64,000 nucleotides of DNA from the IMG/VR virus record IMGVR_UViG_3300037882_003354, positions 62,001-126,000 of that record; one strand, written 5' to 3'. Below the pieces are notes generated by a model that was not told the origin of the DNA, did no database searches, and saw nothing but the letters and a program-made list of their open reading frames with translations. The position numbers and the translations under genes were made by a program. Positions 56,029-64,000 of the stretch are shown here, one piece after another. The first letter of the stretch is position 1; every line of letters begins with the position of its first letter.

Positions 56029-56057
56029 TTGACTGATGAAGGGAGCCAGTGTATAGT
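56029..56057 (+). promoter_or_regulatory. sigma70 early promoter
   Basis: TTGACT-17-TATAGT. Confidence 0.75.
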
Positions 56058-56091: not shown

Positions 56092-56664
56092 ATGAGTACC
56101 AGCTACTGGCTGTACATGCACCCGGAACTCACGGGCGAACCCGGCTATTGGAAGGTGGGCAAGAGCCTGACTCCCTACTCGGCAGTCAGAAGCCGACAGC
56201 GATTCCTGGTCAATGACTTCTATTTGACTGCGGTATGGTTCGGTCATCCCAATGACATAGCTGACCAGGAACGAGACATACTGGTACGGTTCCGACCACC
56301 TCACACTCAGCGACTGGGCAGCAGCCGTAGCGAATTGATCTACTACCAGCCACCGGCAGGGCAGCCACAACTGGCACAGGTGCTGGATCAGATGATACTG
56401 AGCAGTCAACGCAGGATCCAGCGCATGCACCCGGATGATGCCCGGGGCTATCATGCCACCAACAGTGGTCAATGCTGCTTTGGGAGTGACAGGGAGGCAT
56501 ATGCCCATGAATGGAGTGCCATGAAATTGATGGACATGTTCAACGTTCAGAGTCCACGCATGCGCAGTCAGCAGGACTATCAGGCTCTGGTGAACCATTT
56601 CGGAGCCAGGTATCGTAGTTCGCAGCCGGAGACAGACGCAGGAGTGCAGGAGACCGGGATGTAA
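56092..56664 (+). CDS. hypothetical protein, weak GIY-YIG/T5orf172-like pattern
   Basis: Start moved to 56092 (AAGGAA SD); YWLY...YWKVGKS..PY..VR.RQ. Confidence 0.6.
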   Translation: MSTSYWLYMHPELTGEPGYWKVGKSLTPYSAVRSRQRFLVNDFYLTAVWFGHPNDIADQERDILVRFRPPHTQRLGSSRSELIYYQPPAGQPQLAQVLDQMILSSQRRIQRMHPDDARGYHATNSGQCCFGSDREAYAHEWSAMKLMDMFNVQSPRMRSQQDYQALVNHFGARYRSSQPETDAGVQETGM

Positions 56665-56840
56665 AAAACCCCGCTAGACGTCATGGCATGACAGCATGTG
56701 TCCGGGCGCTCAGAGCAAATACCCCGCTAGACGCCTGGGCCGGGGAGCCAGGCATCATGCCCTGTATGCAAATACCCCGCTAGACGTATGAGCACCAGAG
56801 CAGGGTCTCATGCTCAGGGTGTAAAAAGCCCGCTAGACGT
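56664..56840. repeat. four 17-nt direct repeats with exact 53-bp period
   Basis: AAAWA(C/G)CCCGCTAGACG at 56664, 56717, 56770, 56823. Confidence 0.95.
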
Positions 56841-56860
56841 GCGGCCGGACCAGGCATGTA

Positions 56861-57034
56861 TGTGAATAACACTGTGATGAACCTGTGGATGGGCTGTGGG
56901 CGACCTGTGTACAGGCTGTGGATAACTTGGTGGACAGGGCAGGAGTATTTTGGCATAGTCTGCCTGCCTGCTCAGCGTGTGAAAACCCTGAATCAGAGTG
57001 ACCCTGTGACACCACCCCTGATTCATGTGGAATA
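56861..57034 (-). promoter_or_regulatory. DnaA-box cluster
   Basis: Perfect TTWTNCACA matches at 56861-56869 (TTATTCACA) and 56917-56925 (TTATCCACA); one-mismatch copies near 56978 and 57026, all same orientation. Confidence 0.6.
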
Positions 57035-57072
57035 CTCTGAATATTCACTGGCAGATCATGTGGTGGCCACCC

Positions 57073-57100
57073 TTGACAAGCTCAGGGTTTCCTGTATAAT
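57073..57100 (+). promoter_or_regulatory. sigma70 promoter upstream of tRNA
   Basis: TTGACA-16-TATAAT. Confidence 0.8.
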
Positions 57101-57145
57101 CTGATAAATAGACTCACCTGCTCAGATGGGTCACATGTTATTTAT

Positions 57146-57229
57146 GCCCGGGTGGTGAAATGGTAGACACAAGGGACTTAAAATCCCTCGGCGCAAGCTG
57201 TACCGGTTCGAGTCCGGTCCCGGGCACCA
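57146..57229 (+). tRNA. trnL-UAA: tRNA-Leu (anticodon UAA)
   Basis: GCCCGGG/CCCGGGC acceptor stem, TGGTAGAC D-loop, AGGGA-CTTAAAA-TCCCT anticodon arm, long variable arm, GTTCGAGTC, encoded CCA. Confidence 0.97.
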
Positions 57230-57231
57230 CA

Positions 57232-57640
57232 GAGTATGCTCCATACTCATCCGTTCACTGGAGCAAGACCTGTTTTGAGTACTCCAATATTATCCAATTG
57301 ATAATGATATGAGTATCTTGACAGGCCTCCGCTGAATATTTCCACATACTAGTATTGAGTATCTCCAGAGTAAGTCCTGATACTAATATCGAGTATCTGC
57401 CCGGGAGTATCTGAGTATTGAGTATGGGTATCTGCTCCGGAGTAAGTCCTGATACTAGTATTGAGTATGTATTATGTGTATGTATTTGGAGTATCATGGT
57501 AAATACTATACACACAGGAGTTACCATTATGATGATTGCACTATACTTTCTCTTCATGTTCATATTCTACATGGCGTTCTTATACTATTTCCGAGACTGA
57601 GTAACCGCATACTCCGGAGGTATGTTATCTCCTGGAGTAT
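57232..57640. repeat. GAGTA-rich tract with 18-bp direct repeat and palindromes
   Basis: 14 GAGTA copies counted on + strand; GAGTAAGTCCTGATACTA at 57368 and 57440. Confidence 0.85.
57529..57600 (+). CDS. 23-aa hydrophobic membrane peptide
   Basis: MMIALYFLFMFIFYMAFLYYFRD; AGGAG SD and TAAATA upstream. Confidence 0.5.
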   Translation: MMIALYFLFMFIFYMAFLYYFRD

Positions 57641-57721
57641 GTGATTCACACGCCCACCCTCGCCGTCCATCCCCAGACTGCCTGTTCGAACGCACGGTCA
57701 TCTTGTTGTTGTTGTGACTGT

Positions 57722-57749
57722 ATTATAGCGGTCTGACTCCATTCGTCAA
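57722..57749 (-). promoter_or_regulatory. leftward sigma70 promoter
   Basis: TTGACG-16-TATAAT on minus strand. Confidence 0.7.
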
Positions 57750-57752
57750 TCC

Positions 57753-57777
57753 AAGACCCTGCACCGTGTAGGGTCTT
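57753..57777. other. 11-bp inverted repeat between divergent promoters
   Basis: AAGACCCTGCA-CCG-TGTAGGGTCTT (one G-T pair). Confidence 0.75.
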
Positions 57778-57787
57778 TCTTCTGCGC

Positions 57788-57815
57788 TTGACAATCTCTC
57801 ACCGTGTGCTATAGT
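57788..57815 (+). promoter_or_regulatory. early promoter cassette (TATAGTACTGACAT type)
   Basis: TTGACA-16-TATAGT with TGn. Confidence 0.85.
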
Positions 57816-57842
57816 ACTGACATTGCAACAACGAAAGACATC

Positions 57843-58025
57843 ATGTATTTCCAACTCAGCTGGGTGTTCTCAAACGATCACGAGTGGCATAAGAACTTCG
57901 ACAGCCTGCACGAGCGTGAGATGTTCATTAACACCACCGGGCTCCTGACCCATCCGGACATCGTGCGTGTGACTGTTCAGATTGGCCAGTGCTCAGCTGA
58001 CCTGAAAAATGTCTTGACAGCCTGA
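57843..58025 (+). CDS. small early protein
   Basis: Start moved to 57843; 60 aa. Confidence 0.65.
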   Translation: MYFQLSWVFSNDHEWHKNFDSLHEREMFINTTGLLTHPDIVRVTVQIGQCSADLKNVLTA

Positions 58026-58041
58026 ATCATTGTGCTATAGT
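58014..58041 (+). promoter_or_regulatory. early promoter cassette
   Basis: TTGACA-16-TATAGT with TGn. Confidence 0.85.
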
Positions 58042-58067
58042 ACTGACATCAACGCAAGGAGCCACTC

Positions 58068-58256
58068 ATGGAATTTGATCTAGACATCAACTGGCGCGAG
58101 ATCCGGGATCAGAAGATCTGGCTGTTCAACGCCACCGACCACCAGAGCACACCCTGGGAGCGCCGACAATGCGATGCTCTGCTGGACCTGCTGAGTGACA
58201 TCCAGCGGCAGGCCCTGGAGTCAGGCCATGTGGAGAGCGACGTCTTGGGGTTTTAA
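58068..58256 (+). CDS. small early protein
   Basis: 62 aa, AAGGAG SD. Confidence 0.75.
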   Translation: MEFDLDINWREIRDQKIWLFNATDHQSTPWERRQCDALLDLLSDIQRQALESGHVESDVLGF

Positions 58257-58266
58257 CCACTACCGC

Positions 58267-58294
58267 TTGACAACCTGATGGATTGTGTTATAGT
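58267..58294 (+). promoter_or_regulatory. early promoter cassette
   Basis: TTGACA-16-TATAGT with TGn. Confidence 0.85.
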
Positions 58295-58324
58295 ACTGAC
58301 ATTGCAACAAAGAAGGAGAACCTG

Positions 58325-58519
58325 ATGACCAACGAACAACTGGCAAAAAGCATCCGTCACGGCATGTTCGGCAGCCGTAAGAGCTACGACGAGGCCATGG
58401 AGTACGCCCACAGTGTGGCACGAGCCACGGGTGAGACGGCGGCGGTGATGACTGCCGTGCAGGTGGTGGTGAACACCATCGCAGAAATGATCCTGGAGAA
58501 CGAACGTGCTGAGGCCTGA
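58325..58519 (+). CDS. small early protein
   Basis: Start moved to 58325 (AAGGAG); 64 aa. Confidence 0.75.
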   Translation: MTNEQLAKSIRHGMFGSRKSYDEAMEYAHSVARATGETAAVMTAVQVVVNTIAEMILENERAEA

Positions 58520-58623
58520 TGGCTGGACCGGCTGGCCGGCCGGGCTGTTGCAGGACGATGACCGGGGCCTGAGCCGGTGGCTGGCCACCCGTCTGGATGC
58601 CGGATACATCCTGCGCCACCGGC

Positions 58624-58651
58624 TTGACTTGTTGACGACACCTGCTATAAT
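58624..58651 (+). promoter_or_regulatory. early promoter cassette
   Basis: TTGACT-16-TATAAT with TGn. Confidence 0.8.
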
Positions 58652-58681
58652 ACACTCATGATGACGCAAAAGGAGATGGTG

Positions 58682-58909
58682 ATGAAGCGAGACCGTTTTG
58701 CCATGTACACGCCGGCTGGCGATCAGGCAGTGAGTCAGATGGTGGCCACGGCACGACGCCTGGCCTGGAGCTGGCCCGAGGTGCAGTTCCAACTGCAGGT
58801 GCTCAGCCGCACCGCCGGCTGTGAGGAGACCCTGGACACCGCCGTGCGCGAATGCGTGTATGATGCACTGGGTTTTGGCGCACAAGGAGTCTGCTTCTAT
58901 GACTACTGA
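58682..58909 (+). CDS. small early protein
   Basis: Start moved to 58682 (AGGAG); 75 aa. Confidence 0.7.
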   Translation: MKRDRFAMYTPAGDQAVSQMVATARRLAWSWPEVQFQLQVLSRTAGCEETLDTAVRECVYDALGFGAQGVCFYDY

Positions 58910-59108
58910 TGCCGCCGAGCGGGACCTGGACATCTTGATCCGGTGGATCGCCCATGAACACCTGAGCATCAGCACTCTGGAGGCCCGGGGCCGGGACAGC
59001 CTGGACTTCCACGATGTGCATGTGGATGCCATCAGGAGTGCGCTGCATGCGGCATTCCAACTGGGCCAGTCCAATGGATTGAACGCTGGCTACCGCGACC
59101 TGCTGTAA
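58899..59108 (+). CDS. DUF6900-like small protein
   Basis: IA..HL.I.TLE.R..DSLDFHDV.V..I..AL.AAF..G recalled as DUF6900 pattern; AAGGAG SD. Confidence 0.65.
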   Translation: MTTDAAERDLDILIRWIAHEHLSISTLEARGRDSLDFHDVHVDAIRSALHAAFQLGQSNGLNAGYRDLL

Positions 59109-59142
59109 TACATTCATCAACGTAACACAAGGAGAGATAAAA

Positions 59143-59346
59143 ATGGCACAATTTCAAGTCATGGTGACCATGATCGTGGAAGCCCACAGCGACTCAGAGG
59201 CCTGGAGCATAGCCGAGGCGGCCCTGGACCATCTGGTGTGGCCAGGCACGCCCATACTGCGCTGCACAGTGGGTGAAGTGGACGAGGGTACGCCTGACCA
59301 GCGCATCGCGGCTTCGTTGTCGGACCTTGACAACACCCTGGACTGA
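59143..59346 (+). CDS. small early protein
   Basis: 67 aa, AAGGAG SD. Confidence 0.7.
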   Translation: MAQFQVMVTMIVEAHSDSEAWSIAEAALDHLVWPGTPILRCTVGEVDEGTPDQRIAASLSDLDNTLD

Positions 59347-59355
59347 TGTTATAAT
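59327..59355 (+). promoter_or_regulatory. early promoter cassette (TATAATACATTCATCA type)
   Basis: TTGACA-17-TATAAT with TGn. Confidence 0.85.
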
Positions 59356-59385
59356 ACATTCATCAACGTAACGCAAGGAGATGAC

Positions 59386-59547
59386 ATGAGAAATTACCGA
59401 GCCTATTACAAGGGCAAGACCTTCGACGTGCAGGCGCCCAACTCATTCCAGGCGCAGGAGGCGGCTGCCCGGATCCTGCGCATCAAGAAGACCTGGGAGG
59501 TGGCTGTGGTGCTGTTGGATGTGCCACTTGACACCACCACACTCTGA
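59386..59547 (+). CDS. 53-aa early protein
   Basis: Below cutoff; MRNYRAYYKGKTFDVQAPNSFQAQEAAA...; AAGGAG SD. Confidence 0.7.
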   Translation: MRNYRAYYKGKTFDVQAPNSFQAQEAAARILRIKKTWEVAVVLLDVPLDTTTL

Positions 59548-59556
59548 TGCTATACT
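59528..59556 (+). promoter_or_regulatory. early promoter cassette
   Basis: TTGACA-17-TATACT with TGn. Confidence 0.8.
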
Positions 59557-59580
59557 ACGGCACGAACAACGCAAAAGGAC

Positions 59581-59796
59581 ATGAACATGACATGGGACAG
59601 AGCAGGCCAACGAGTGGCTGGAGTCTACCTGGGCTACACCGTGGCGGGCCTGGTGACGGAAAGCCGAGTCAAGTATGGTGGTCGGGTGCAACACACTCTG
59701 CAACTGGATCAGCCCATGACCTTGTTCAGCACGGAACGCTCGGTCTTGCTCATGGACGAACGCGATCTTTTTAAGACCGGCCGGGAGCCTGCATGA
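59581..59796 (+). CDS. small early protein
   Basis: 71 aa (or start 59587), AAGGA SD. Confidence 0.75.
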   Translation: MNMTWDRAGQRVAGVYLGYTVAGLVTESRVKYGGRVQHTLQLDQPMTLFSTERSVLLMDERDLFKTGREPA

Positions 59797-60047
59797 CGGA
59801 CACCATGAACCGGGAACAGTTCATCCGGTATGCCCGAGAGGCACTGAGCCCGGATGTTCTGGAGGGGCTCTACGAACGCATCAGTGAGCACAATGGCGAG
59901 GTCACTCAGTTCGGCGACAGCTGGCCCGGTGCCCTGGTCAGCATCCGGAGTCAGATTGAGGATGTGCATGCCATTGAGCGCCAGTTGGCCCGGCTGGAAG
60001 CTCGTGAGCCCAGGTGTTTCCACTTCCGTGTGCAGAGTCCCAGATAA
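59793..60047 (+). CDS. small early protein
   Basis: 84 aa, ATGA overlap. Confidence 0.7.
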   Translation: MTDTMNREQFIRYAREALSPDVLEGLYERISEHNGEVTQFGDSWPGALVSIRSQIEDVHAIERQLARLEAREPRCFHFRVQSPR

Positions 60048-60050
60048 GGC

Positions 60051-60078
60051 TTGACAATCTGAATCGTTCTGTTATAGT
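60051..60078 (+). promoter_or_regulatory. early promoter cassette
   Basis: TTGACA-16-TATAGT with TGn. Confidence 0.85.
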
Positions 60079-60109
60079 ACTGACATTGCAACAAAGAAAG
60101 GAAGACGAC

Positions 60110-60445
60110 ATGACTGAAGAAGAAATCATCATCCGTGCAGTGGAGTTGGGCCGTCAGGCTGCTCGCCAGGCCACCCAGGATTACCTGGATGCCAACGGTG
60201 AGCACCACTTCGACTGTGGGTTCGCATGGGTCAAGGTGTCCGCAGACGGCCGCAGTCGAGTGGGACGCGCACTCAAGAAGGCTGGCTTTAATAAGCCCTA
60301 CGGCGAAAAAGGTCTCCAGATGTGGAACCCGTCGGGCCACTTCACGCAGTCCAGGACTGCCAAGGAGTACGGCGCCAGGGCCATGGCTGAGGTGCTCAAG
60401 ACCCGCCTGGGAGTAGAGGCCGTTGGACTCGGCCGGGCAGACTGA
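60110..60445 (+). CDS. small early protein
   Basis: Start moved to 60110 (AAGGA); CGFAWV..WNP..TQS..KE.GA. Confidence 0.75.
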   Translation: MTEEEIIIRAVELGRQAARQATQDYLDANGEHHFDCGFAWVKVSADGRSRVGRALKKAGFNKPYGEKGLQMWNPSGHFTQSRTAKEYGARAMAEVLKTRLGVEAVGLGRAD

Positions 60446-60446
60446 C

Positions 60447-60602
60447 ATGAAGGTCATTTACAATGGCCTGCTGGGCGGGTGGTACATCGTGCGCGGCCCA
60501 CACCACACGCCCCTGGGCGGCAGGTTTGACAGCCGTGAGGCCGCGCTGGCGCATCTGAAAAGAAGGAATGCCCCTACAGGCAGTCGGGGCTTGACAAGTT
60601 GA
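60447..60602 (+). CDS. 51-aa early protein
   Basis: Below cutoff; MKVIYNGLLGGWYIVRGPHHTPLGGRF... Confidence 0.65.
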   Translation: MKVIYNGLLGGWYIVRGPHHTPLGGRFDSREAALAHLKRRNAPTGSRGLTS

Positions 60603-60618
60603 ATCGTTGTGTTATAGT
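60591..60618 (+). promoter_or_regulatory. early promoter cassette
   Basis: TTGACA-16-TATAGT with TGn. Confidence 0.85.
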
Positions 60619-60648
60619 ACTGACATTGCAACAAACAAGGGAAACAAG

Positions 60649-60909
60649 ATGAGCAACTACCCCAACATGTCGTATTGTGCGTTTGAGAACACCACCCTGG
60701 CCATGGGTCAGCTGTTGGGCATGATGTCGCAGGTGGACTGCCTGAAGGAAATGGACTTGTCGCGTGACGAGTTGCGCGCCTTCCGTAACTTGAAGGACCT
60801 GTGCGAGCAGTTCCTGGAGGGCGCCGAGGGCCTGGAGAGCGCCGACGAAGAATACGACGGGCAGCCGGATGAAGCCCAGGAATGGGAATCGTTTGATCCA
60901 GACTGTTGA
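60649..60909 (+). CDS. small acidic early protein
   Basis: Start moved to 60649; NMSYCAFENT motif, acidic tail. Confidence 0.75.
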   Translation: MSNYPNMSYCAFENTTLAMGQLLGMMSQVDCLKEMDLSRDELRAFRNLKDLCEQFLEGAEGLESADEEYDGQPDEAQEWESFDPDC

Positions 60910-60934
60910 CACAGGGCCGCAAGGCCTGTATAAT
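60906..60934 (+). promoter_or_regulatory. early promoter cassette
   Basis: TTGACA-17-TATAAT. Confidence 0.85.
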
Positions 60935-60967
60935 ACATTCATCACAACGCAACGAAAAGGAAACACC

Positions 60968-61171
60968 ATGGAACTGATCCTGAACACGCCCAAGCAACAC
61001 ATGATCGCCACCCTGCTCTGGGAGGCTCCCGACGATCTGACGGTGCAGGCAGTACTGCGCATCTACGGTGCTGAAGCTCGCGCCATCCAGGACCTGATGA
61101 TCGTCACCAGTCTGGACCACGTGGACAACGTGGAAGAAGCACAGAGCATCCTGCAATCCTTTCGCAAGTAA
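60968..61171 (+). CDS. small early protein
   Basis: Start moved to 60968 (AAGGA); 67 aa. Confidence 0.75.
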   Translation: MELILNTPKQHMIATLLWEAPDDLTVQAVLRIYGAEARAIQDLMIVTSLDHVDNVEEAQSILQSFRK

Positions 61172-61187
61172 TTAATAGGCTCACAAG

Positions 61188-61328
61188 ATGACCACGAAAA
61201 TCGGCACCAAGATCCCATCCAGCACCGGCGGTGTCATCACCTTCACCCGTACTGGGCTGATCCATACAGCAGGCAAGGCCTACAGCGGCCGCTCGGTGGA
61301 CACCACTGAGGCCAAGAAGAAGGCTTGA
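61188..61328 (+). CDS. 46-aa early protein
   Basis: Below cutoff; MTTKIGTKIPSSTGGVITFTRTGLIHTAG...; stop overlaps next -35. Confidence 0.55.
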   Translation: MTTKIGTKIPSSTGGVITFTRTGLIHTAGKAYSGRSVDTTEAKKKA

Positions 61329-61352
61329 CAAGCAGACTGATCCTGCTATACT
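61325..61352 (+). promoter_or_regulatory. early promoter cassette
   Basis: TTGACA-16-TATACT with TGn. Confidence 0.85.
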
Positions 61353-61382
61353 ACATTCATCAACAACGCAAAGGCAACAGAC

Positions 61383-61616
61383 ATGGACTACGATGTGCGC
61401 AAGTTTACCAACAAGTTGATTGACCTCCGTGACGAGGGCATGATCAGCGACCGTGACATTGTCATGGCAGCGCTCAAGTACATGAGCGAAGATGATGTGC
61501 GCGACATGTGCGAGTGCAACGGCTTTGACGAGATCATGGACCTGGTGCCGGATGAAGATGAAGACGAGGCCCTGTTGAGCAATTTCAACTATGTCGGCTC
61601 GCGCCACCACTATTAA
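61383..61616 (+). CDS. small acidic early protein
   Basis: 77 aa; LKYMSEDDVRDMCECN. Confidence 0.75.
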   Translation: MDYDVRKFTNKLIDLRDEGMISDRDIVMAALKYMSEDDVRDMCECNGFDEIMDLVPDEDEDEALLSNFNYVGSRHHY

Positions 61617-61628
61617 AAAGGATTTGAC

Positions 61629-61910
61629 ATGAAAGGCGGAACTCTGTTCTATCGCGTGATCCCGGCAGACAAGGATCGTGGCTACTCGCTGTTGACCAGC
61701 TGGGACAAACCAGTGGTCCAGCGCACCTGCTACACCATGAGCAGCATGACCAACCCCAGTCGTGCAGCCATGATGGCCAGTCTGGCTGAAACCCAGCGGC
61801 GTGGTGGTGCAGAGCATCTGGTGGACACCACGGAACTCAACATCCAGAAGAAATTAGCCCGACTCTTCGGTGAAGACGACGCACCCGCCAAAACCGACGT
61901 AACCTGTTGA
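61629..61910 (+). CDS. small early protein
   Basis: 93 aa, AAGGA SD. Confidence 0.6.
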   Translation: MKGGTLFYRVIPADKDRGYSLLTSWDKPVVQRTCYTMSSMTNPSRAAMMASLAETQRRGGAEHLVDTTELNIQKKLARLFGEDDAPAKTDVTC

Positions 61911-62017
61911 TTTATAAGACCCCAAGACGCTCTGTCGCAGCTGGAACGCCTCAAACGGGTCGGTATGCGTGAAAGAACATTTTAGAGCATTGTCGACGTC
62001 TTGAACCTGGAATCCTG

Positions 62018-62242
62018 ATGAATCACAGTCCCATTCTGCAGTGGACAGCCACTGCCGTGACACTGCTGGGCGCCATGCTCACAGCGGCAGCTCTGGATCC
62101 CTGGAATGTCTACTGTCTGAATGCCGGCAGTGGCCTGTGGCTCATCTGGGCCTGGCGGGTGCGCAGCCGCAGCTTGATCGTGGTCAACGCTGGCCTGGTG
62201 CTCATATACATGGCAGGCCTGGTCCGAGCCTTCTTTGCTTGA
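62018..62242 (+). CDS. small three-helix membrane protein
   Basis: 74 aa, largely hydrophobic. Confidence 0.7.
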   Translation: MNHSPILQWTATAVTLLGAMLTAAALDPWNVYCLNAGSGLWLIWAWRVRSRSLIVVNAGLVLIYMAGLVRAFFA

Positions 62243-62266
62243 CAATCTGGATCATTGTGCTATAGT
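62239..62266 (+). promoter_or_regulatory. early promoter cassette
   Basis: TTGACA-16-TATAGT with TGn. Confidence 0.85.
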
Positions 62267-62296
62267 ACTGACATCGCAACACAACAAGGAAGACAC

Positions 62297-62554
62297 ATGA
62301 AGAAAGACCTTATGACCCGTGACCTGAAACGGCATGCCCTGGTACAAGACACCGTGACTGGCTTTGTGCAGGCTCAGTACGAATTGCATGACAGCCATGC
62401 CTACGCCACCGGCTACATGGAGAGCCTGCTGGTGCAGATCTTGACCTATCACGTGACTGAGGCCAACCGTGCCCGATTCCTGGATGAGCTGGCTCGCAGC
62501 GCCGACAAGGCTCGGGTGGAGAGCACCTACAGGGCATTGACCCTGGCTGCGTGA
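62297..62554 (+). CDS. small early protein
   Basis: Start moved to 62297 (AAGGA); 85 aa. Confidence 0.7.
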   Translation: MKKDLMTRDLKRHALVQDTVTGFVQAQYELHDSHAYATGYMESLLVQILTYHVTEANRARFLDELARSADKARVESTYRALTLAA

Positions 62555-62733
62555 TGACTGACTACCAGTTCTGCATGATCCTCCGCGATGGCGGCCATCG
62601 GATCATCACCGTGGGGGCGGAGAATCAGGATCACGCCCATGACATGTTCCATCGCATCTACGGCACGGACCTGCCGGCCTTCCTGTACCAGCACCCGCCG
62701 GCCTTTGTTCAAGAACTGGTTGACAACTCCTGA
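62551..62733 (+). CDS. small early protein
   Basis: 60 aa, overlaps upstream stop. Confidence 0.65.
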   Translation: MMTDYQFCMILRDGGHRIITVGAENQDHAHDMFHRIYGTDLPAFLYQHPPAFVQELVDNS

Positions 62734-62747
62734 ACTCCTGCTATAAT
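62720..62747 (+). promoter_or_regulatory. early promoter cassette
   Basis: TTGACA-16-TATAAT with TGn. Confidence 0.85.
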
Positions 62748-62780
62748 ACATTCATCACAACGCAACAGGGGAAGCAGAGC

Positions 62781-63053
62781 ATGGCCTACGTATTGATCAA
62801 TCGCAACCAGAAGGGACGGCAAGAAGCCATCCGCACCTATGCCACCTACAAGGGTGCCCTGATTGGCATGCGCGTGAGCAACCGCAACGCCGGCTGGACT
62901 CGTAGCAGCCGCTGCTACCTGGGCTACTGCGCCATGGAATGGGGTCATGATGCCGCTGGCGACTACGAGTACGCACCCTACGCCATCATGCACGAGTTTG
63001 ATTACAAGATGCGGCATCAGCCTCTTGACACGGTGCGTGGGGCCGCTGTATAA
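62781..63053 (+). CDS. small early protein
   Basis: 90 aa directly after promoter leader. Confidence 0.7.
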   Translation: MAYVLINRNQKGRQEAIRTYATYKGALIGMRVSNRNAGWTRSSRCYLGYCAMEWGHDAAGDYEYAPYAIMHEFDYKMRHQPLDTVRGAAV

Positions 63054-63054
63054 T
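63025..63054 (+). promoter_or_regulatory. early promoter cassette
   Basis: TTGACA-18-TATAAT. Confidence 0.75.
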
Positions 63055-63084
63055 ACACACATGAAGACACAACAGGAGCAACAG

Positions 63085-63255
63085 ATGAATGACTTTAGAC
63101 GGGCCATGCGAGTCATGTGCTCTGCATGTCAAGAATTTCACCAGGTGAAGGATGTGAAATTCATTGACATCCAGGAAGATTATGCCGGCAGGGATCTGAT
63201 GACCTTTGAGTGCTCGGTGACCAGCACCCAACAAAAGGCCTACGTGCTGGGCTGA
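63085..63255 (+). CDS. small Cys-containing early protein
   Basis: Start moved to 63085 (AGGAG); CSAC...FEC. Confidence 0.7.
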   Translation: MNDFRRAMRVMCSACQEFHQVKDVKFIDIQEDYAGRDLMTFECSVTSTQQKAYVLG

Positions 63256-63259
63256 TCAC

Positions 63260-63287
63260 TTGACAATTGGTGCCATGATGTTATAAT
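63260..63287 (+). promoter_or_regulatory. early promoter cassette
   Basis: TTGACA-16-TATAAT with TGn. Confidence 0.85.
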
Positions 63288-63317
63288 ACACACATGATGA
63301 CACAACTGGAGCAACAC

Positions 63318-63518
63318 ATGAATGAATTCGTAGCATCGGCAGTGGATCGGGTGGAGAGCAAGTTCCTGGTCCACTGCGACACTGATGTTCCAGCCGAGAT
63401 CCTGGCTGATGTCCTGCACTATTGCCGGGTCAAAGGCATTGACTTCGACAACGAGCTGCGCCTGGCTCGTGACTACGTGGAGGCAGAACTGGCTGAGTTT
63501 TTCGGTGTAGGTGCTTGA
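63318..63518 (+). CDS. small early protein
   Basis: Start moved to 63318 (GGAG); LADVLHYC..KGIDF. Confidence 0.75.
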   Translation: MNEFVASAVDRVESKFLVHCDTDVPAEILADVLHYCRVKGIDFDNELRLARDYVEAELAEFFGVGA

Positions 63519-63542
63519 CAACCGGAGCGATCCTGCTATAAT
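63515..63542 (+). promoter_or_regulatory. early promoter cassette
   Basis: TTGACA-16-TATAAT with TGn. Confidence 0.85.
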
Positions 63543-63572
63543 GCTGACATGGACAACGCAAAGGAGCAGCAA

Positions 63573-63875
63573 ATGGAACTGAACACACGGCAGGTACGGG
63601 CAATTGCATTGAAGGCAACGGACAAGCCCTTCCACACTTGGACGGACAAGACCAGCGACTACGATGACGCACGACGCAGCGTGGTGTGGAGTTTTTATGG
63701 CACGGGTGGGGCACAGGCATTGTTTGACCTGTTGCAGGCAGAGTTTGCACGGCTGGGCGTGACGAATAAGTTGACGCTCACGGGCACTGCCTATGAATAC
63801 GTGCGCGTGATTGCACCCCTGGGCAATCTGCCTGCCCTGCGCTGGCAGGACTTGCCTGAAGTTTATCCCATCTGA
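63573..63875 (+). CDS. small early protein
   Basis: Start moved to 63573 (AAGGAG); 100 aa. Confidence 0.7.
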   Translation: MELNTRQVRAIALKATDKPFHTWTDKTSDYDDARRSVVWSFYGTGGAQALFDLLQAEFARLGVTNKLTLTGTAYEYVRVIAPLGNLPALRWQDLPEVYPI

Positions 63876-63889
63876 TGGTGGCAGGGTGC

Positions 63890-63918
63890 TTGACAACACC
63901 AGCACCCTGCGCTATAAT
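63890..63918 (+). promoter_or_regulatory. early promoter cassette
   Basis: TTGACA-17-TATAAT. Confidence 0.85.
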
Positions 63919-63951
63919 ACACACATGACGACGCAACAACAGGAGAGGCAA

Positions 63952-63999
63952 ATGACGGTGACCCAATACCTGATGACCCAGGGCTGCGGCCAGGAAGAG
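63952..63999 (+). CDS. early protein, partial (runs off window end)
   Basis: AGGAG SD then ATG ACG GTG ACC CAA TAC CTG ATG... Confidence 0.6.
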   Translation, partial: MTVTQYLMTQGCGQEE

Positions 64000-64000
64000 A

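What the first reader, a model, noticed from the sequence alone, without database searches (positions are those of the whole stretch)
56861..57034. Co-oriented DnaA boxes in a lytic phage
Seen: two perfect 9-mers 56 bp apart, two one-mismatch copies and several degenerate CTGTG repeats immediately after the phased array. Known: TTWTNCACA is the bacterial DnaA box; T4-type phages normally replicate without DnaA. Inference: host-DnaA-assisted early origin, or a datA-like sink that titrates DnaA to stop host replication.
Basis: partly seen in the sequence, partly recalled or inferred. Interest (0 to 1): 0.6.

Follow-up and report, generated by a model that had tools for sequence, protein, structure and literature searches.

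The report
Phased DnaA-box array heading early genes
A lytic freshwater jumbo phage carries, just upstream of its first early promoter, six evenly spaced binding-site-like motifs for the host replication initiator DnaA, built like one arm of a bacterial origin, and similar arrays turn out to sit at the head of early genes in many other phages.

Summary
Positions 56861-56925 hold six co-oriented 9-mers that all start with TGTG, spaced 12, 11, 11, 11 and 11 bp. The first and last are consensus DnaA boxes; the four inner ones have 2-3 mismatches. Box density alone is not significant, but the phased chain is unique in the 322-kb genome and never arose in 200 simulations. The layout matches one arm of E. 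coli oriC. The genome is a T4-capsid jumbo phage with no dnaA, integrase or Rep_3. The array lies 150-210 bp upstream of the first of 30 consensus sigma-70 promoters of the early region. Bacterial-origin features (adjacent unwinding element, DnaA-trios, IHF site) are absent, and family-level relatives lack the array. However, a distant phage sharing only the upstream gene carries 14 phased boxes in the same control region, and another carries two boxes in the same slot. Head-to-tail arrays of this kind are widespread in viral contigs. They also head the early genes of cultured SP6-like lytic phages and lie at a record end in a T7-like one. I read it as a host-DnaA loading pad acting locally on the early-promoter unit. 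Origin and sink remain open rivals. DnaA binding is untested.

The parts
56861..56925 (-). Six-unit head-to-tail DnaA-box array. Units start at 56861, 56873, 56884, 56895, 56906 and 56917. Units 1 and 6 are consensus boxes; units 2-5 are weak sites 2 bp apart (3 bp after unit 1). Boxes read TTATCCACA on the minus strand.
56978..56986 (-). One-mismatch DnaA box (TGTGAAAAC on +), not in 11-bp phase with the array
57026..57034 (-). One-mismatch DnaA box (TGTGGAATA on +), about 45 bp upstream of the -35 of the promoter at 57073
56664..56875 (+). Four 53-bp direct repeats with core ACCCCGCTAGACG, found only here in the genome. Copy number is 3 in variants. The same core follows the homologous gene in every relative examined.
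56092..56664 (+). 190-aa ORF with a GIY-YIG-like nuclease fold and a C-terminal helix-turn-helix-like part. It has its own sigma-70-like promoter at 56029-56057.
56943..56958 (+). Conserved block GAGTAT..ATAG immediately after the array, present at the same place in L168, L171, L172 and L174
57073..57100 (+). Perfect sigma-70 consensus promoter (TTGACA, 16 nt, TATAAT), the first of 30 plus-strand consensus promoters of the early region
57146..57229 (+). tRNA-Leu (anticodon TAA)
57232..57640 (.). AT-rich, easily melted region carrying ten GAGTAT motifs, a cluster unique in the genome. It is rich in insertions, deletions and rearrangements among natural variants.
57788..58294 (+). Three repeated consensus promoters (57788, 58014, 58267) with small early ORFs that are conserved in relative L169

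Best explanation
Positions 56861-56925 are a loading pad for the host initiator protein DnaA. Two consensus boxes anchor DnaA. Four weaker 9-mers, each 2 bp from the next and all pointing the same way, let ATP-DnaA fill in cooperatively to a six-protomer filament on one face of the helix, as in one arm of E. coli oriC. The pad sits at the head of the phage's host-RNA-polymerase-transcribed early region, 150-210 bp upstream of the first consensus sigma-70 promoter, with its ATAA ends facing that promoter-tRNA-AT-rich unit. I take it to act locally and directionally on that unit. On this reading it gates or tunes the onset of early transcription, and any transcription-activated initiation in the AT-rich repeats behind the tRNA, according to the host's DnaA-ATP state. 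I do not take it to be a bacterial-type origin or a passive sink. Shown: architecture, statistical uniqueness, position, recurrence in other phages. Inferred: DnaA binding, filament formation, effect on the promoter unit.
For: (1) Six TGTG 9-mers at 11-bp steps, bounded by TTATTCACA and TTATCCACA, unique in the genome and never reached in 200 simulations. (2) The same rules are described for oriC arms: four low-affinity sites exactly 2 bp apart, same orientation, flanked by high-affinity anchors (PMC4451416). (3) The phage has no dnaA or DnaA-like DNA-binding domain, so the ligand would be the host protein. (4) The promoter at 57073 is the first of 30 plus-strand consensus promoters spanning 57073-73485, and the small plus-strand ORFs there are conserved genes. 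(5) Recurrence in this control region: L168 shares only the upstream gene (60-63% identity) yet has 14 co-oriented boxes, 9 of them perfect, in 11-bp phase beside its tRNA and AT-rich repeats. L178 has two boxes 22 bp apart in the same slot and orientation as the window's array. (6) At least 120 viral contigs carry head-to-tail arrays, and none of 50 tested encodes DnaA. The downstream gene is co-oriented in 67 of 85. A GC-rich 20 bp and then AT-rich DNA lie only on the ATAA side. (7) In cultured lytic SP6-like Klebsiella phages the array lies between the last late genes and the first early genes, with the same polarity; a T7-like Berlinvirus has one in the first 150 nt of its record. (8) Precedent for host cell-cycle regulator sites controlling phage early genes: CtrA sites in terminal repeats and gap regions, validated by EMSA and reporter assays (PMC9437464).
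Against: There are no binding or expression data. The array is 150-210 bp from the -35 hexamer, which is far for direct contact with RNA polymerase. In L168 the 14-box array points away from the next downstream promoter; its polarity fits only the AT-rich repeats upstream of it. L171 has no boxes in the equivalent region. Family-level relatives (the L001 contig, Vibrio phage 2.275.O, GAP32, XaC1, Phosso) have no phased chain, so the element is dispensable for this phage group. Sequence conservation among close variants is uninformative because the whole 56861-57180 block is 95-99% identical. In small viral contigs the arrays often adjoin terminase, portal or scaffold genes rather than early genes.
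Confidence: 0.42

Rival explanations
1. Early replication origin helper. DnaA bound to the array cooperates with the 53-bp repeats and the AT-rich GAGTAT repeats to open DNA or load a helicase for first-round replication, as DnaA boxes do beside iterons in P1, F or pSC101 origins. It might instead boost a T4-style promoter-plus-unwinding-element R-loop origin.
For: Three repeat clusters, each unique in the genome, lie within 1.1 kb of non-coding DNA at a strand switch between minus-strand late genes and plus-strand early genes. An easily melted region in the top 1% of the window lies 340 bp downstream, behind a perfect promoter. The box-to-AT-rich polarity is shared by the window, L168 and the viral-contig class.
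Against: The AT-rich DNA is on the ATAA side. In E. coli oriC (sequence from my own memory, unverified) the unwinding element lies on the TGTG/CACA side of R1. There are no DnaA-trios, no IHF consensus and only one GATC. The genome has no Rep_3 initiator, and the adjoining ORF has a GIY-YIG nuclease-like fold rather than a winged-helix Rep fold. There is no cumulative GC-skew turn at this position. Relatives lack the array. In T5 the DnaA boxes lie away from the mapped origins.
Confidence: 0.2
2. datA-like sink. As the phage genome multiplies, the arrays soak up or inactivate host DnaA and stop host re-initiation.
For: Cooperative arrays have high avidity. The number of boxes (6-8 here, 14 in L168) and their position and orientation relative to the tRNA vary between lineages, which suits a function that only needs many clustered boxes.
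Against: There is no IHF consensus, which datA requires. One array per genome offers few sites until late in infection. The class shows a conserved polarity toward downstream genes and AT-rich DNA, which a passive sink does not need. The array is absent from close family relatives.
Confidence: 0.12
3. Entry or tether element of the T5 kind. Membrane-associated DnaA binds the array on incoming DNA and pauses, anchors or protects the leading early region.
For: T5-like phages keep 8 DnaA boxes in the repeat-rich untranslated region beside their first-entering, host-transcribed genes. A Berlinvirus phage carries an array in the first 150 nt of its record, and SP6-like phages carry arrays at the record start or at the late-to-early junction. 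Here too the array adjoins a repeat-rich untranslated region at the edge of the early region.
Against: The T5 model is itself an untested hypothesis. The physical ends and packaging mode of this genome are unknown; the 99-bp terminal repeat looks like an assembly overlap. The contig-only runs gave no read pile-ups.
Confidence: 0.08
4. The 11-bp CTGTG repeats are iterons for a phage-encoded protein, and the two consensus boxes are coincidental. Alternatively, the array is a decaying, non-functional remnant of a once-perfect array.
For: Only the TGTG core is kept in the four inner units. Substitutions among variants fall in their 3' halves. The region holds other phage-specific repeats.
Against: The end units match the DnaA consensus exactly, one of them TTATCCACA. 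L168 and more than 100 viral contigs use near-perfect DnaA boxes at the same 11-bp step. L139 and L169 have a unit 2 that is closer to consensus (TGTGCATGA). The chain is unique in the genome.
Confidence: 0.1

Closest known systems
Low-affinity DnaA site arrays of E. coli oriC (R1-[R5M, tau2, I1, I2]-R2 and R2-[C3, C2, I3, C1]-R4; Rozgaja et al. 2011, as reviewed in PMC4451416)
   Same: Four weak 9-mers exactly 2 bp apart, all in one orientation, lying between two high-affinity consensus boxes, which puts the protomers on one face of the helix.
   Different: There is a single arm only, with no opposed second array. It has no adjacent unwinding element on the CACA side, no IHF site and no GATC cluster. 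It lies in a lytic phage that has no dnaA.
DnaA boxes of the injection-stop (iss) region of T5-like phages (Davison, bioRxiv 10.1101/866236)
   Same: It is a lytic phage. The boxes lie in a repeat-rich untranslated region beside the first host-transcribed genes, and a roughly 5-turn (52-53 bp) periodicity occurs nearby.
   Different: T5 has pairs of boxes 3 bp apart embedded in inverted repeats, not a six-unit head-to-tail array. The T5 region lies in a long terminal repeat, whereas the termini here are unknown.
Head-to-tail DnaA-box arrays found here in SP6-like Klebsiella phages (Molineuxvirinae), Berlinvirus Shigella phage A7, Microviridae and at least 120 IMG/VR contigs
   Same: They share the 11-bp unit (TGTGGATAACY), co-orientation and an intergenic position, and TGTGGATAA reads on the sense strand of the downstream genes. 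In the SP6-like phages the array sits between the late genes and the early genes.
   Different: Those arrays consist mostly of near-perfect boxes. The window's array has strong ends and a weak interior. None of the cultured phages found is a T4-type or jumbo phage.
datA locus of E. coli
   Same: It is a non-origin cluster of DnaA boxes that could lower active DnaA.
   Different: datA needs an IHF site between specific boxes, and none is found here. Its boxes are not a 2-bp-spaced array (own knowledge).
CtrA-binding site clusters in terminal repeats and gap regions of Alphaproteobacteria phages (PMC9437464)
   Same: They are clustered sites for a host cell-cycle master regulator in non-coding DNA that controls phage gene expression.
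   Different: The regulator is different. That study found no positional clustering of DnaA sites in its phage set.
Iteron origins with auxiliary DnaA boxes (P1 oriR, F oriS, pSC101; own knowledge)
   Same: The order is gene, then direct repeats, then DnaA boxes, then AT-rich DNA.
   Different: The adjoining gene has a GIY-YIG nuclease-like fold, not a Rep fold. The repeats are spaced 53 bp rather than about 22 bp. No Rep_3 is present in the genome.

Membership tests
DnaA-oligomerising box array (oriC-arm type) | At least one consensus TTATNCACA anchor box | tested here: met
   Two anchors, TTATTCACA and TTATCCACA, at the two ends
DnaA-oligomerising box array (oriC-arm type) | Weak sites exactly 2 bp apart, all in one orientation, next to the anchor | tested here: met
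   Start-to-start steps of 12, 11, 11, 11, 11 bp on one strand. The rule is quoted from PMC4451416.
DnaA-oligomerising box array (oriC-arm type) | Cooperative, ATP-dependent DnaA occupancy | not testable with these tools
   Needs EMSA or footprinting
Bacterial-type replication origin (oriC / basal unwinding system) | AT-rich unwinding element adjoining the CACA/TGTG end of the proximal box | tested here: not met
   Upstream of 56861 is GC-rich repeat DNA. The nearest easily melted DNA is 340 bp away on the ATAA side.
Bacterial-type replication origin (oriC / basal unwinding system) | DnaA-trio run next to the box | tested here: not met
   No trinucleotide run on either side
Bacterial-type replication origin (oriC / basal unwinding system) | IHF site and/or GATC cluster (enterobacterial type) | tested here: not met
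   No WATCAR-N4-TTR match in 56600-57700, and a single GATC. The host is unknown, so this is of limited weight.
datA-type DnaA-inactivating locus | IHF-binding site among the boxes | tested here: not met
datA-type DnaA-inactivating locus | Stimulates DnaA-ATP hydrolysis or titrates DnaA in vivo | not testable with these tools
   Needs in vivo or in vitro assays
Iteron-type plasmid or phage origin | Rep initiator gene next to its iterons | tested here: not met
   No Rep_3 in the genome. The adjoining ORF folds like GIY-YIG nucleases, Z 6.2-6.8.
Iteron-type plasmid or phage origin | Direct repeats plus DnaA boxes plus AT-rich DNA | tested here: inconclusive
   All three are present, but the repeats are 53 bp apart and the AT-rich DNA is separated from them by a promoter and a tRNA gene.
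T5 iss-type DnaA boxes | Box pairs 3 bp apart inside inverted repeats with a 52-bp spacer | tested here: not met
   The arrangement here is a head-to-tail array with no such inverted repeats.
T5 iss-type DnaA boxes | Untranslated, repeat-rich DNA beside the first host-transcribed genes of a lytic phage | tested here: met
Head-to-tail 11-bp DnaA-box arrays of phages (class delineated here) | At least 4 units at 11-bp steps, intergenic, TGTGGATAA on the sense strand of the downstream gene | tested here: met
   Window. Class: (67 of 85 downstream genes co-oriented).
Head-to-tail 11-bp DnaA-box arrays of phages (class delineated here) | GC-rich about 20 bp, then AT-rich DNA, on the ATAA side only | tested here: met
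   Class profile. In the window, GC-rich DNA follows the array and AT-rich DNA lies further downstream.

The most novel reading that the evidence does not exclude
Host DnaA is a general, so far overlooked host factor for lytic phages. Head-to-tail DnaA-box arrays placed at the head of the host-transcribed early region would form a DnaA-ATP filament. They are seen in this T4-type jumbo phage and in SP6-like podophages; a T7-like podophage (array at its record end), T5-like phages (boxes in pairs) and many uncultured phages may belong with them. The filament would work as a checkpoint that couples the start of infection (early transcription, DNA entry or first initiation) to the replication state of the host cell.
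Probability: 0.25. Interest if true: 0.85.

Novelty: new variant of a known kind. Interest (0 to 1): 0.64.

Why it matters
DnaA is the one protein that reports a bacterium's readiness to replicate. If lytic phages of unrelated families place cooperative DnaA pads in front of their first genes, they may read host cell-cycle or growth state at the moment of infection. Alternatively they may use DnaA as a structural factor for entry or initiation. The idea is directly testable in cultivable phages that carry the same arrays (Klebsiella SP6-like phages, Shigella phage A7), using dnaA alleles, array deletions and DnaA ChIP. It would also tie the unexplained DnaA boxes of T5 into a wider pattern. 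For this jumbo phage, it marks the 1.1-kb non-coding hub at 56.66-57.8 kb as the control region of the early programme.

Tried and rejected
1. Box density as evidence. The window count equals expectation, and a pair within 100 bp is common in simulations. I rejected it as a test and used the phasing statistic instead.
2. A phage-encoded DnaA. There is no Bac_DnaA match. The weak Bac_DnaA_C hit (E 0.02) lies in an I-TevI-like GIY-YIG endonuclease, so I rejected it.
3. The 53-bp repeats as structured RNA or a CRISPR-like array. Rfam found only the tRNA, the units do not fold better than shuffles, and the exact motif pair is absent from IMG/VR.
4. Purifying selection on the array among close variants. 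The whole 56861-57180 block is 95-99% identical in L139 and L169, so this is uninformative. The read laying tables are truncated, so the pattern 'substitutions only in 3' halves of inner units' is suggestive only.
5. Conservation in family-level relatives. None was found.
6. A match to the basal unwinding system. The polarity is opposite, no trios are present, and there is no IHF consensus.
7. The upstream ORF as a Rep initiator. Its fold is GIY-YIG-like, and it has no Pfam or PHROG hit.
8. GC-skew turn at the locus. None is present.
9. Literature on DnaA arrays in podophage ends. No open paper mentioning them was found.

Full report
WHAT IS THERE. The window is bases 62001-126000 of a 322,512-bp IMG/VR virus record. 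Its 99-bp terminal repeat looks like an assembly overlap. On the plus strand, 56861-56925 holds six 9-mers that all begin with TGTG. They start at 56861, 56873, 56884, 56895, 56906 and 56917, giving steps of 12, 11, 11, 11 and 11 bp. The first (TGTGAATAA) and the last (TGTGGATAA) are perfect DnaA boxes when read on the minus strand (TTATTCACA and TTATCCACA). The inner four have 2, 2, 3 and 2 mismatches to TTWTNCACA. Two one-mismatch boxes follow on the same strand at 56978 and 57026. The 'degenerate CTGTG repeats' are in fact the interior of one phased array.

IS IT MORE THAN CHANCE.
- Box density is not significant. The window has 10 boxes against 8.1 expected.
- The genome has 52 boxes against 34 +/- 6 in locally composed Markov simulations. 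That is a mild general excess spread through coding DNA.
- Two boxes within 100 bp arise in 28 of 100 simulated genomes.
- What is not chance is the phasing. A chain of six TGTG at 10-12-bp steps occurs once in the genome, the next longest chain is 3, and the maximum in 200 simulations was 4.

SETTING.
- The genome encodes a Gp23-type capsid protein, a family-B DNA polymerase and a DnaB-like helicase.
- The capsid protein is 68-71% identical to those of Vibrio phage 2.275.O, GAP32, CBB, XaC1 and Phosso. The phage is thus a T4-capsid jumbo phage of the GAP32/RaK2-like assemblage.
- It has no Bac_DnaA, no tyrosine integrase and no Rep_3. A weak DnaA_C hit is a homing-endonuclease-like ORF.
- Near-identical DNA occurs in freshwater and lake metagenomes from 14 studies.
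- Left of 55995 the genes run on the minus strand; those identified further left include tail-fibre and virion proteins.
- From 57073 to 73485 there are 30 near-consensus sigma-70 promoters, all on the plus strand. Each precedes a small ORF, and those tested are conserved genes in a close relative.
- The array therefore lies 150-210 bp upstream of the first promoter of the host-transcribed early region.

The non-coding hub reads, in order:
- a 190-aa ORF at 56092-56664;
- four 53-bp repeats with core ACCCCGCTAGACG;
- the array;
- a short conserved block at 56943-56958;
- the perfect promoter at 57073-57100;
- tRNA-Leu at 57146-57229;
- an AT-rich, easily melted stretch with ten GAGTAT motifs at 57232-57640.
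Each of the three repeat kinds is unique to this place in the genome.

ANATOMY COMPARED WITH oriC. The review PMC4451416 states the rule for E. coli oriC. Each arm has four low-affinity sites, each exactly 2 bp from its neighbour and all facing one way. They lie in a gap flanked by high-affinity boxes, so that an anchored DnaA helps load the next site and the array fills progressively. The phage array follows this rule: two consensus anchors, four weak sites, 2-bp spacers (3 bp once) and one orientation. Other origin features are missing. The DNA on the TGTG side is GC-rich repeat, and the only easily melted DNA is 340 bp away on the ATAA side, behind a promoter and a tRNA gene. There is no DnaA-trio run, no IHF consensus and a single GATC. 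From my memory of the E. coli oriC sequence, its unwinding element lies on the TGTG side of R1, which is the opposite polarity.

RELATIVES.
- Family-level relatives do not have the element. The 310-kb IMG/VR contig behind L001, Vibrio phage 2.275.O, Phosso, XaC1 and GAP32 have no DnaA-like phased chain. In L001 the neighbouring 133-aa protein is 60% identical, and its boxes are at background with no cluster.
- Close variants keep the element. L139 (a JGI lake contig) and L169/L170 carry the same six units. In L169/L170 the neighbouring genes are 91-99% identical at the protein level. Unit 2 there is TGTGCATGA, which is nearer to consensus. L169 also has a change at the free N position of unit 5.
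- In Logan contigs from three further studies, the listed substitutions fall in the 3' halves of units 3 and 5. None is listed in the TGTG cores or in the two perfect boxes. Those tables are truncated. The whole 56861-57180 block is also 95-99% identical in L139 and L169. I therefore count this only as weak support.
- The informative comparison comes from the 190-aa ORF, which has 15 metagenomic homologues. In every contig with enough flank (L168, L169, L171, L172, L174, L178) the gene is followed by 3-5 repeats with the core ACCCCGCT. In all of these except L172, whose contig ends first, a sigma-70 promoter (mostly with a tRNA) follows as well.
- L168 shares nothing else detectable with this genome. 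Yet it carries 14 co-oriented DnaA boxes, 9 perfect and 5 with one mismatch, in three 11-bp-phased blocks directly after its tRNA and AT-rich repeats.
- L178 has TGTGGTAAA and TGTGGAAAA, 22 bp apart, in the same slot and orientation as the window's array. L172 has a one-mismatch box in that slot. L171 has none.
- DnaA boxes are therefore a recurrent, though not obligatory, component of this control region. In both the window and L168 the ATAA ends of the boxes face the promoter-tRNA-AT-rich unit, although the arrays lie on opposite sides of it.

A WIDER CLASS.
- Nearly all hits are arrays of 4-10 near-perfect boxes with the unit TGTGGATAACY.
- None of 50 such contigs encodes DnaA.
- With the array written as TGTGGATAA, the downstream gene is co-oriented in 67 of 85 cases and the upstream gene is divergent in 65 of 89.
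- The first 20 bp after the array are GC-rich, and the next 80-400 bp are AT-enriched. The TGTG side shows no such enrichment.
- Neighbouring genes include terminase, portal and scaffold genes, RecT and a CI-like repressor.
- Among 185,579 bacterial species genomes, six-unit arrays are rare: 28 loci, mostly Binatia, all near-perfect repeats.
- Among cultured phages, a BLAST search with the L168 array found 34 records. These are SP6-like Klebsiella phages (Molineuxvirinae), the T7-like Shigella phage A7 (Berlinvirus), others in Escherichia, Enterobacter, Proteus and Vibrio, and Microviridae.
- In Shigella phage A7 about ten boxes fill the first 150 nt of the record.
- In Klebsiella phage K61PH164C1 the array lies between the last tail-spike genes and the first early genes, which lead to the RNA polymerase gene. 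TGTGGATAA is on the early-gene sense strand, about 600 bp before the first early gene. This is the same arrangement as in the window.
- I found no open paper describing these arrays. The nearest is Davison's preprint on T5 (10.1101/866236). It reports eight conserved DnaA boxes in the repeat-rich untranslated injection-stop region of 25 T5-like phages, and argues that they are not origin-related.

MECHANISM.
- Shown: an oriC-arm-like arrangement of DnaA-box motifs, non-random, at the head of the early region, recurring in other phages with a consistent polarity.
- Inferred: host DnaA binds the two anchors, and ATP-DnaA fills the four weak sites to make a short filament.
- My pick (about 0.4) is that this filament acts locally on the downstream promoter-tRNA-AT-rich unit. 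It would tie the onset of early transcription, and possibly transcription-activated initiation in the AT-rich repeats, to host DnaA-ATP status. The precedent is the clusters of host CtrA sites in phage terminal repeats and gap regions that control phage genes (PMC9437464).
- Origin helper (0.2) is weakened by the wrong polarity, the missing origin features and the absence of a Rep protein.
- A passive sink (0.12) is weakened by the conserved polarity and the lack of an IHF site.
- A T5-like entry or tether role (0.08) cannot be judged without knowing the genome ends.
- A non-DnaA ligand or a decaying remnant (0.1) is weakened by the perfect end boxes and by the perfect arrays elsewhere.

THE UPSTREAM ORF. 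It has no Pfam or PHROG match. An AlphaFold model built on 16 sequences has mean pLDDT 81. It matches GIY-YIG nucleases best: At-HIGLE and Slx1 at Z 6.2-6.8, with the next unrelated hit at Z 4.0, and I-TevI and UvrC lower. The C-terminal 50 residues resemble helix-turn-helix domains weakly. In L169 this gene is only 67% identical while its neighbours are 91-99% identical, like a swapped mobile allele. Because the ACCCCGCT repeats always follow it, its product may bind or cut them. This is inference only.

VERDICT. This is a new variant of a known kind of element. It belongs to a widespread and, as far as I could find, undescribed class of phage DnaA-box arrays.

LIMITS. There is no binding, expression or replication data, and the host is unknown. 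The reads were contigs only. Counts for the viral-contig class include related contigs. The E. coli oriC sequence polarity is from my own memory.

Noticed in passing
window 56664-56875; also L168 1570-1760, L171 4520-4640, L172 3665-3780, L174 1070-1195, L178 995-1095: Direct repeats with the core ACCCCGCT (four copies exactly 53 bp apart in the window) always follow the homologues of the 190-aa ORF. Their spacing (26-83 bp) and number (3-5) differ between lineages. Copy number is 3 in L139, L169 and one Logan run. They do not fold as RNA better than shuffled sequence.
   Followed up: partly
window 56092-56664 (+): A 190-aa protein family without a Pfam or PHROG match. The model shows a GIY-YIG nuclease-like fold (Z 6.2-6.8 to At-HIGLE and Slx1) plus a C-terminal helix-turn-helix-like part. 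In L169 it is only 67% identical while the flanking genes are 91-99% identical, like a swapped mobile allele.
   Followed up: partly
window 57232-57640: Ten GAGTAT motifs and ATACTAGTAT palindromes lie in the most easily melted DNA of the neighbourhood. The cluster is unique in the genome. Natural variants differ here by insertions, deletions and rearrangements (skips of 79, 116 and 160 bp).
   Followed up: partly
window 57073-64000 and on to genome 135485: Thirty near-consensus sigma-70 promoters, all on the plus strand, span 16.4 kb, many with a TG-extended -10 element. Each precedes a small ORF. This is the phage's host-polymerase early region. The long minus-strand ORFs listed there are probably spurious.
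   Followed up: partly
L169/L170 2990-3630: In a close relative the tRNA-Leu gene is interrupted after about 40 nt by a roughly 560-bp insert encoding an HNH-type endonuclease-like ORF, and an intact tRNA-Leu follows. This suggests a homing-endonuclease hotspot like the T4 tRNA region.
   Followed up: no
L015-L134 (IMG/VR), L140-L167 (bacterial genomes), L175, L176, L179 (cultured phages): Head-to-tail arrays of near-perfect DnaA boxes (unit TGTGGATAACY, 4-14 copies) are common in viral contigs that lack dnaA. They also occur in the first 150-200 nt of the records of lytic Autographiviridae or at their late-to-early junction, in Microviridae, on a Pantoea edessiphila plasmid, and as very long arrays in Binatia chromosomes. 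No open paper describing the phage arrays was found.
   Followed up: partly
genome 303797-309687 (outside the window): Nine TTWTNCACA boxes lie within 6 kb (maximum 5 in 100 simulations), including two TTATCCACA. They are in both orientations, unphased, and apparently inside coding DNA of a lower-GC segment.
   Followed up: partly
window 56074 / 58050: Contigs from four runs in four studies join 58050 to 56074 with three extra letters. In some relatives the GIY-YIG-like gene may therefore sit behind a promoter like the one at 58014, or the repeated promoter leaders may mislead the alignment.
   Followed up: no
window 57529-57600 (+): A 23-codon, very hydrophobic ORF (MMIALYFLFMFIFYMAFLYYFRD) with a good ribosome-binding site, conserved in L139 and L169. 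It may be a small membrane peptide.
   Followed up: no
genome 43175-43879 (L010 1075-1779): An I-TevI-like GIY-YIG homing-endonuclease ORF. It is the source of the weak Bac_DnaA_C match.
   Followed up: yes
L178 1160-1330, L174 1290-1400, L168 1890-2000: Between the conserved block and the sigma-70 promoter, relatives carry T-tracts repeated at about 10-11-bp intervals. This suggests intrinsically curved DNA upstream of the promoter. The window has fewer of them.
   Followed up: no
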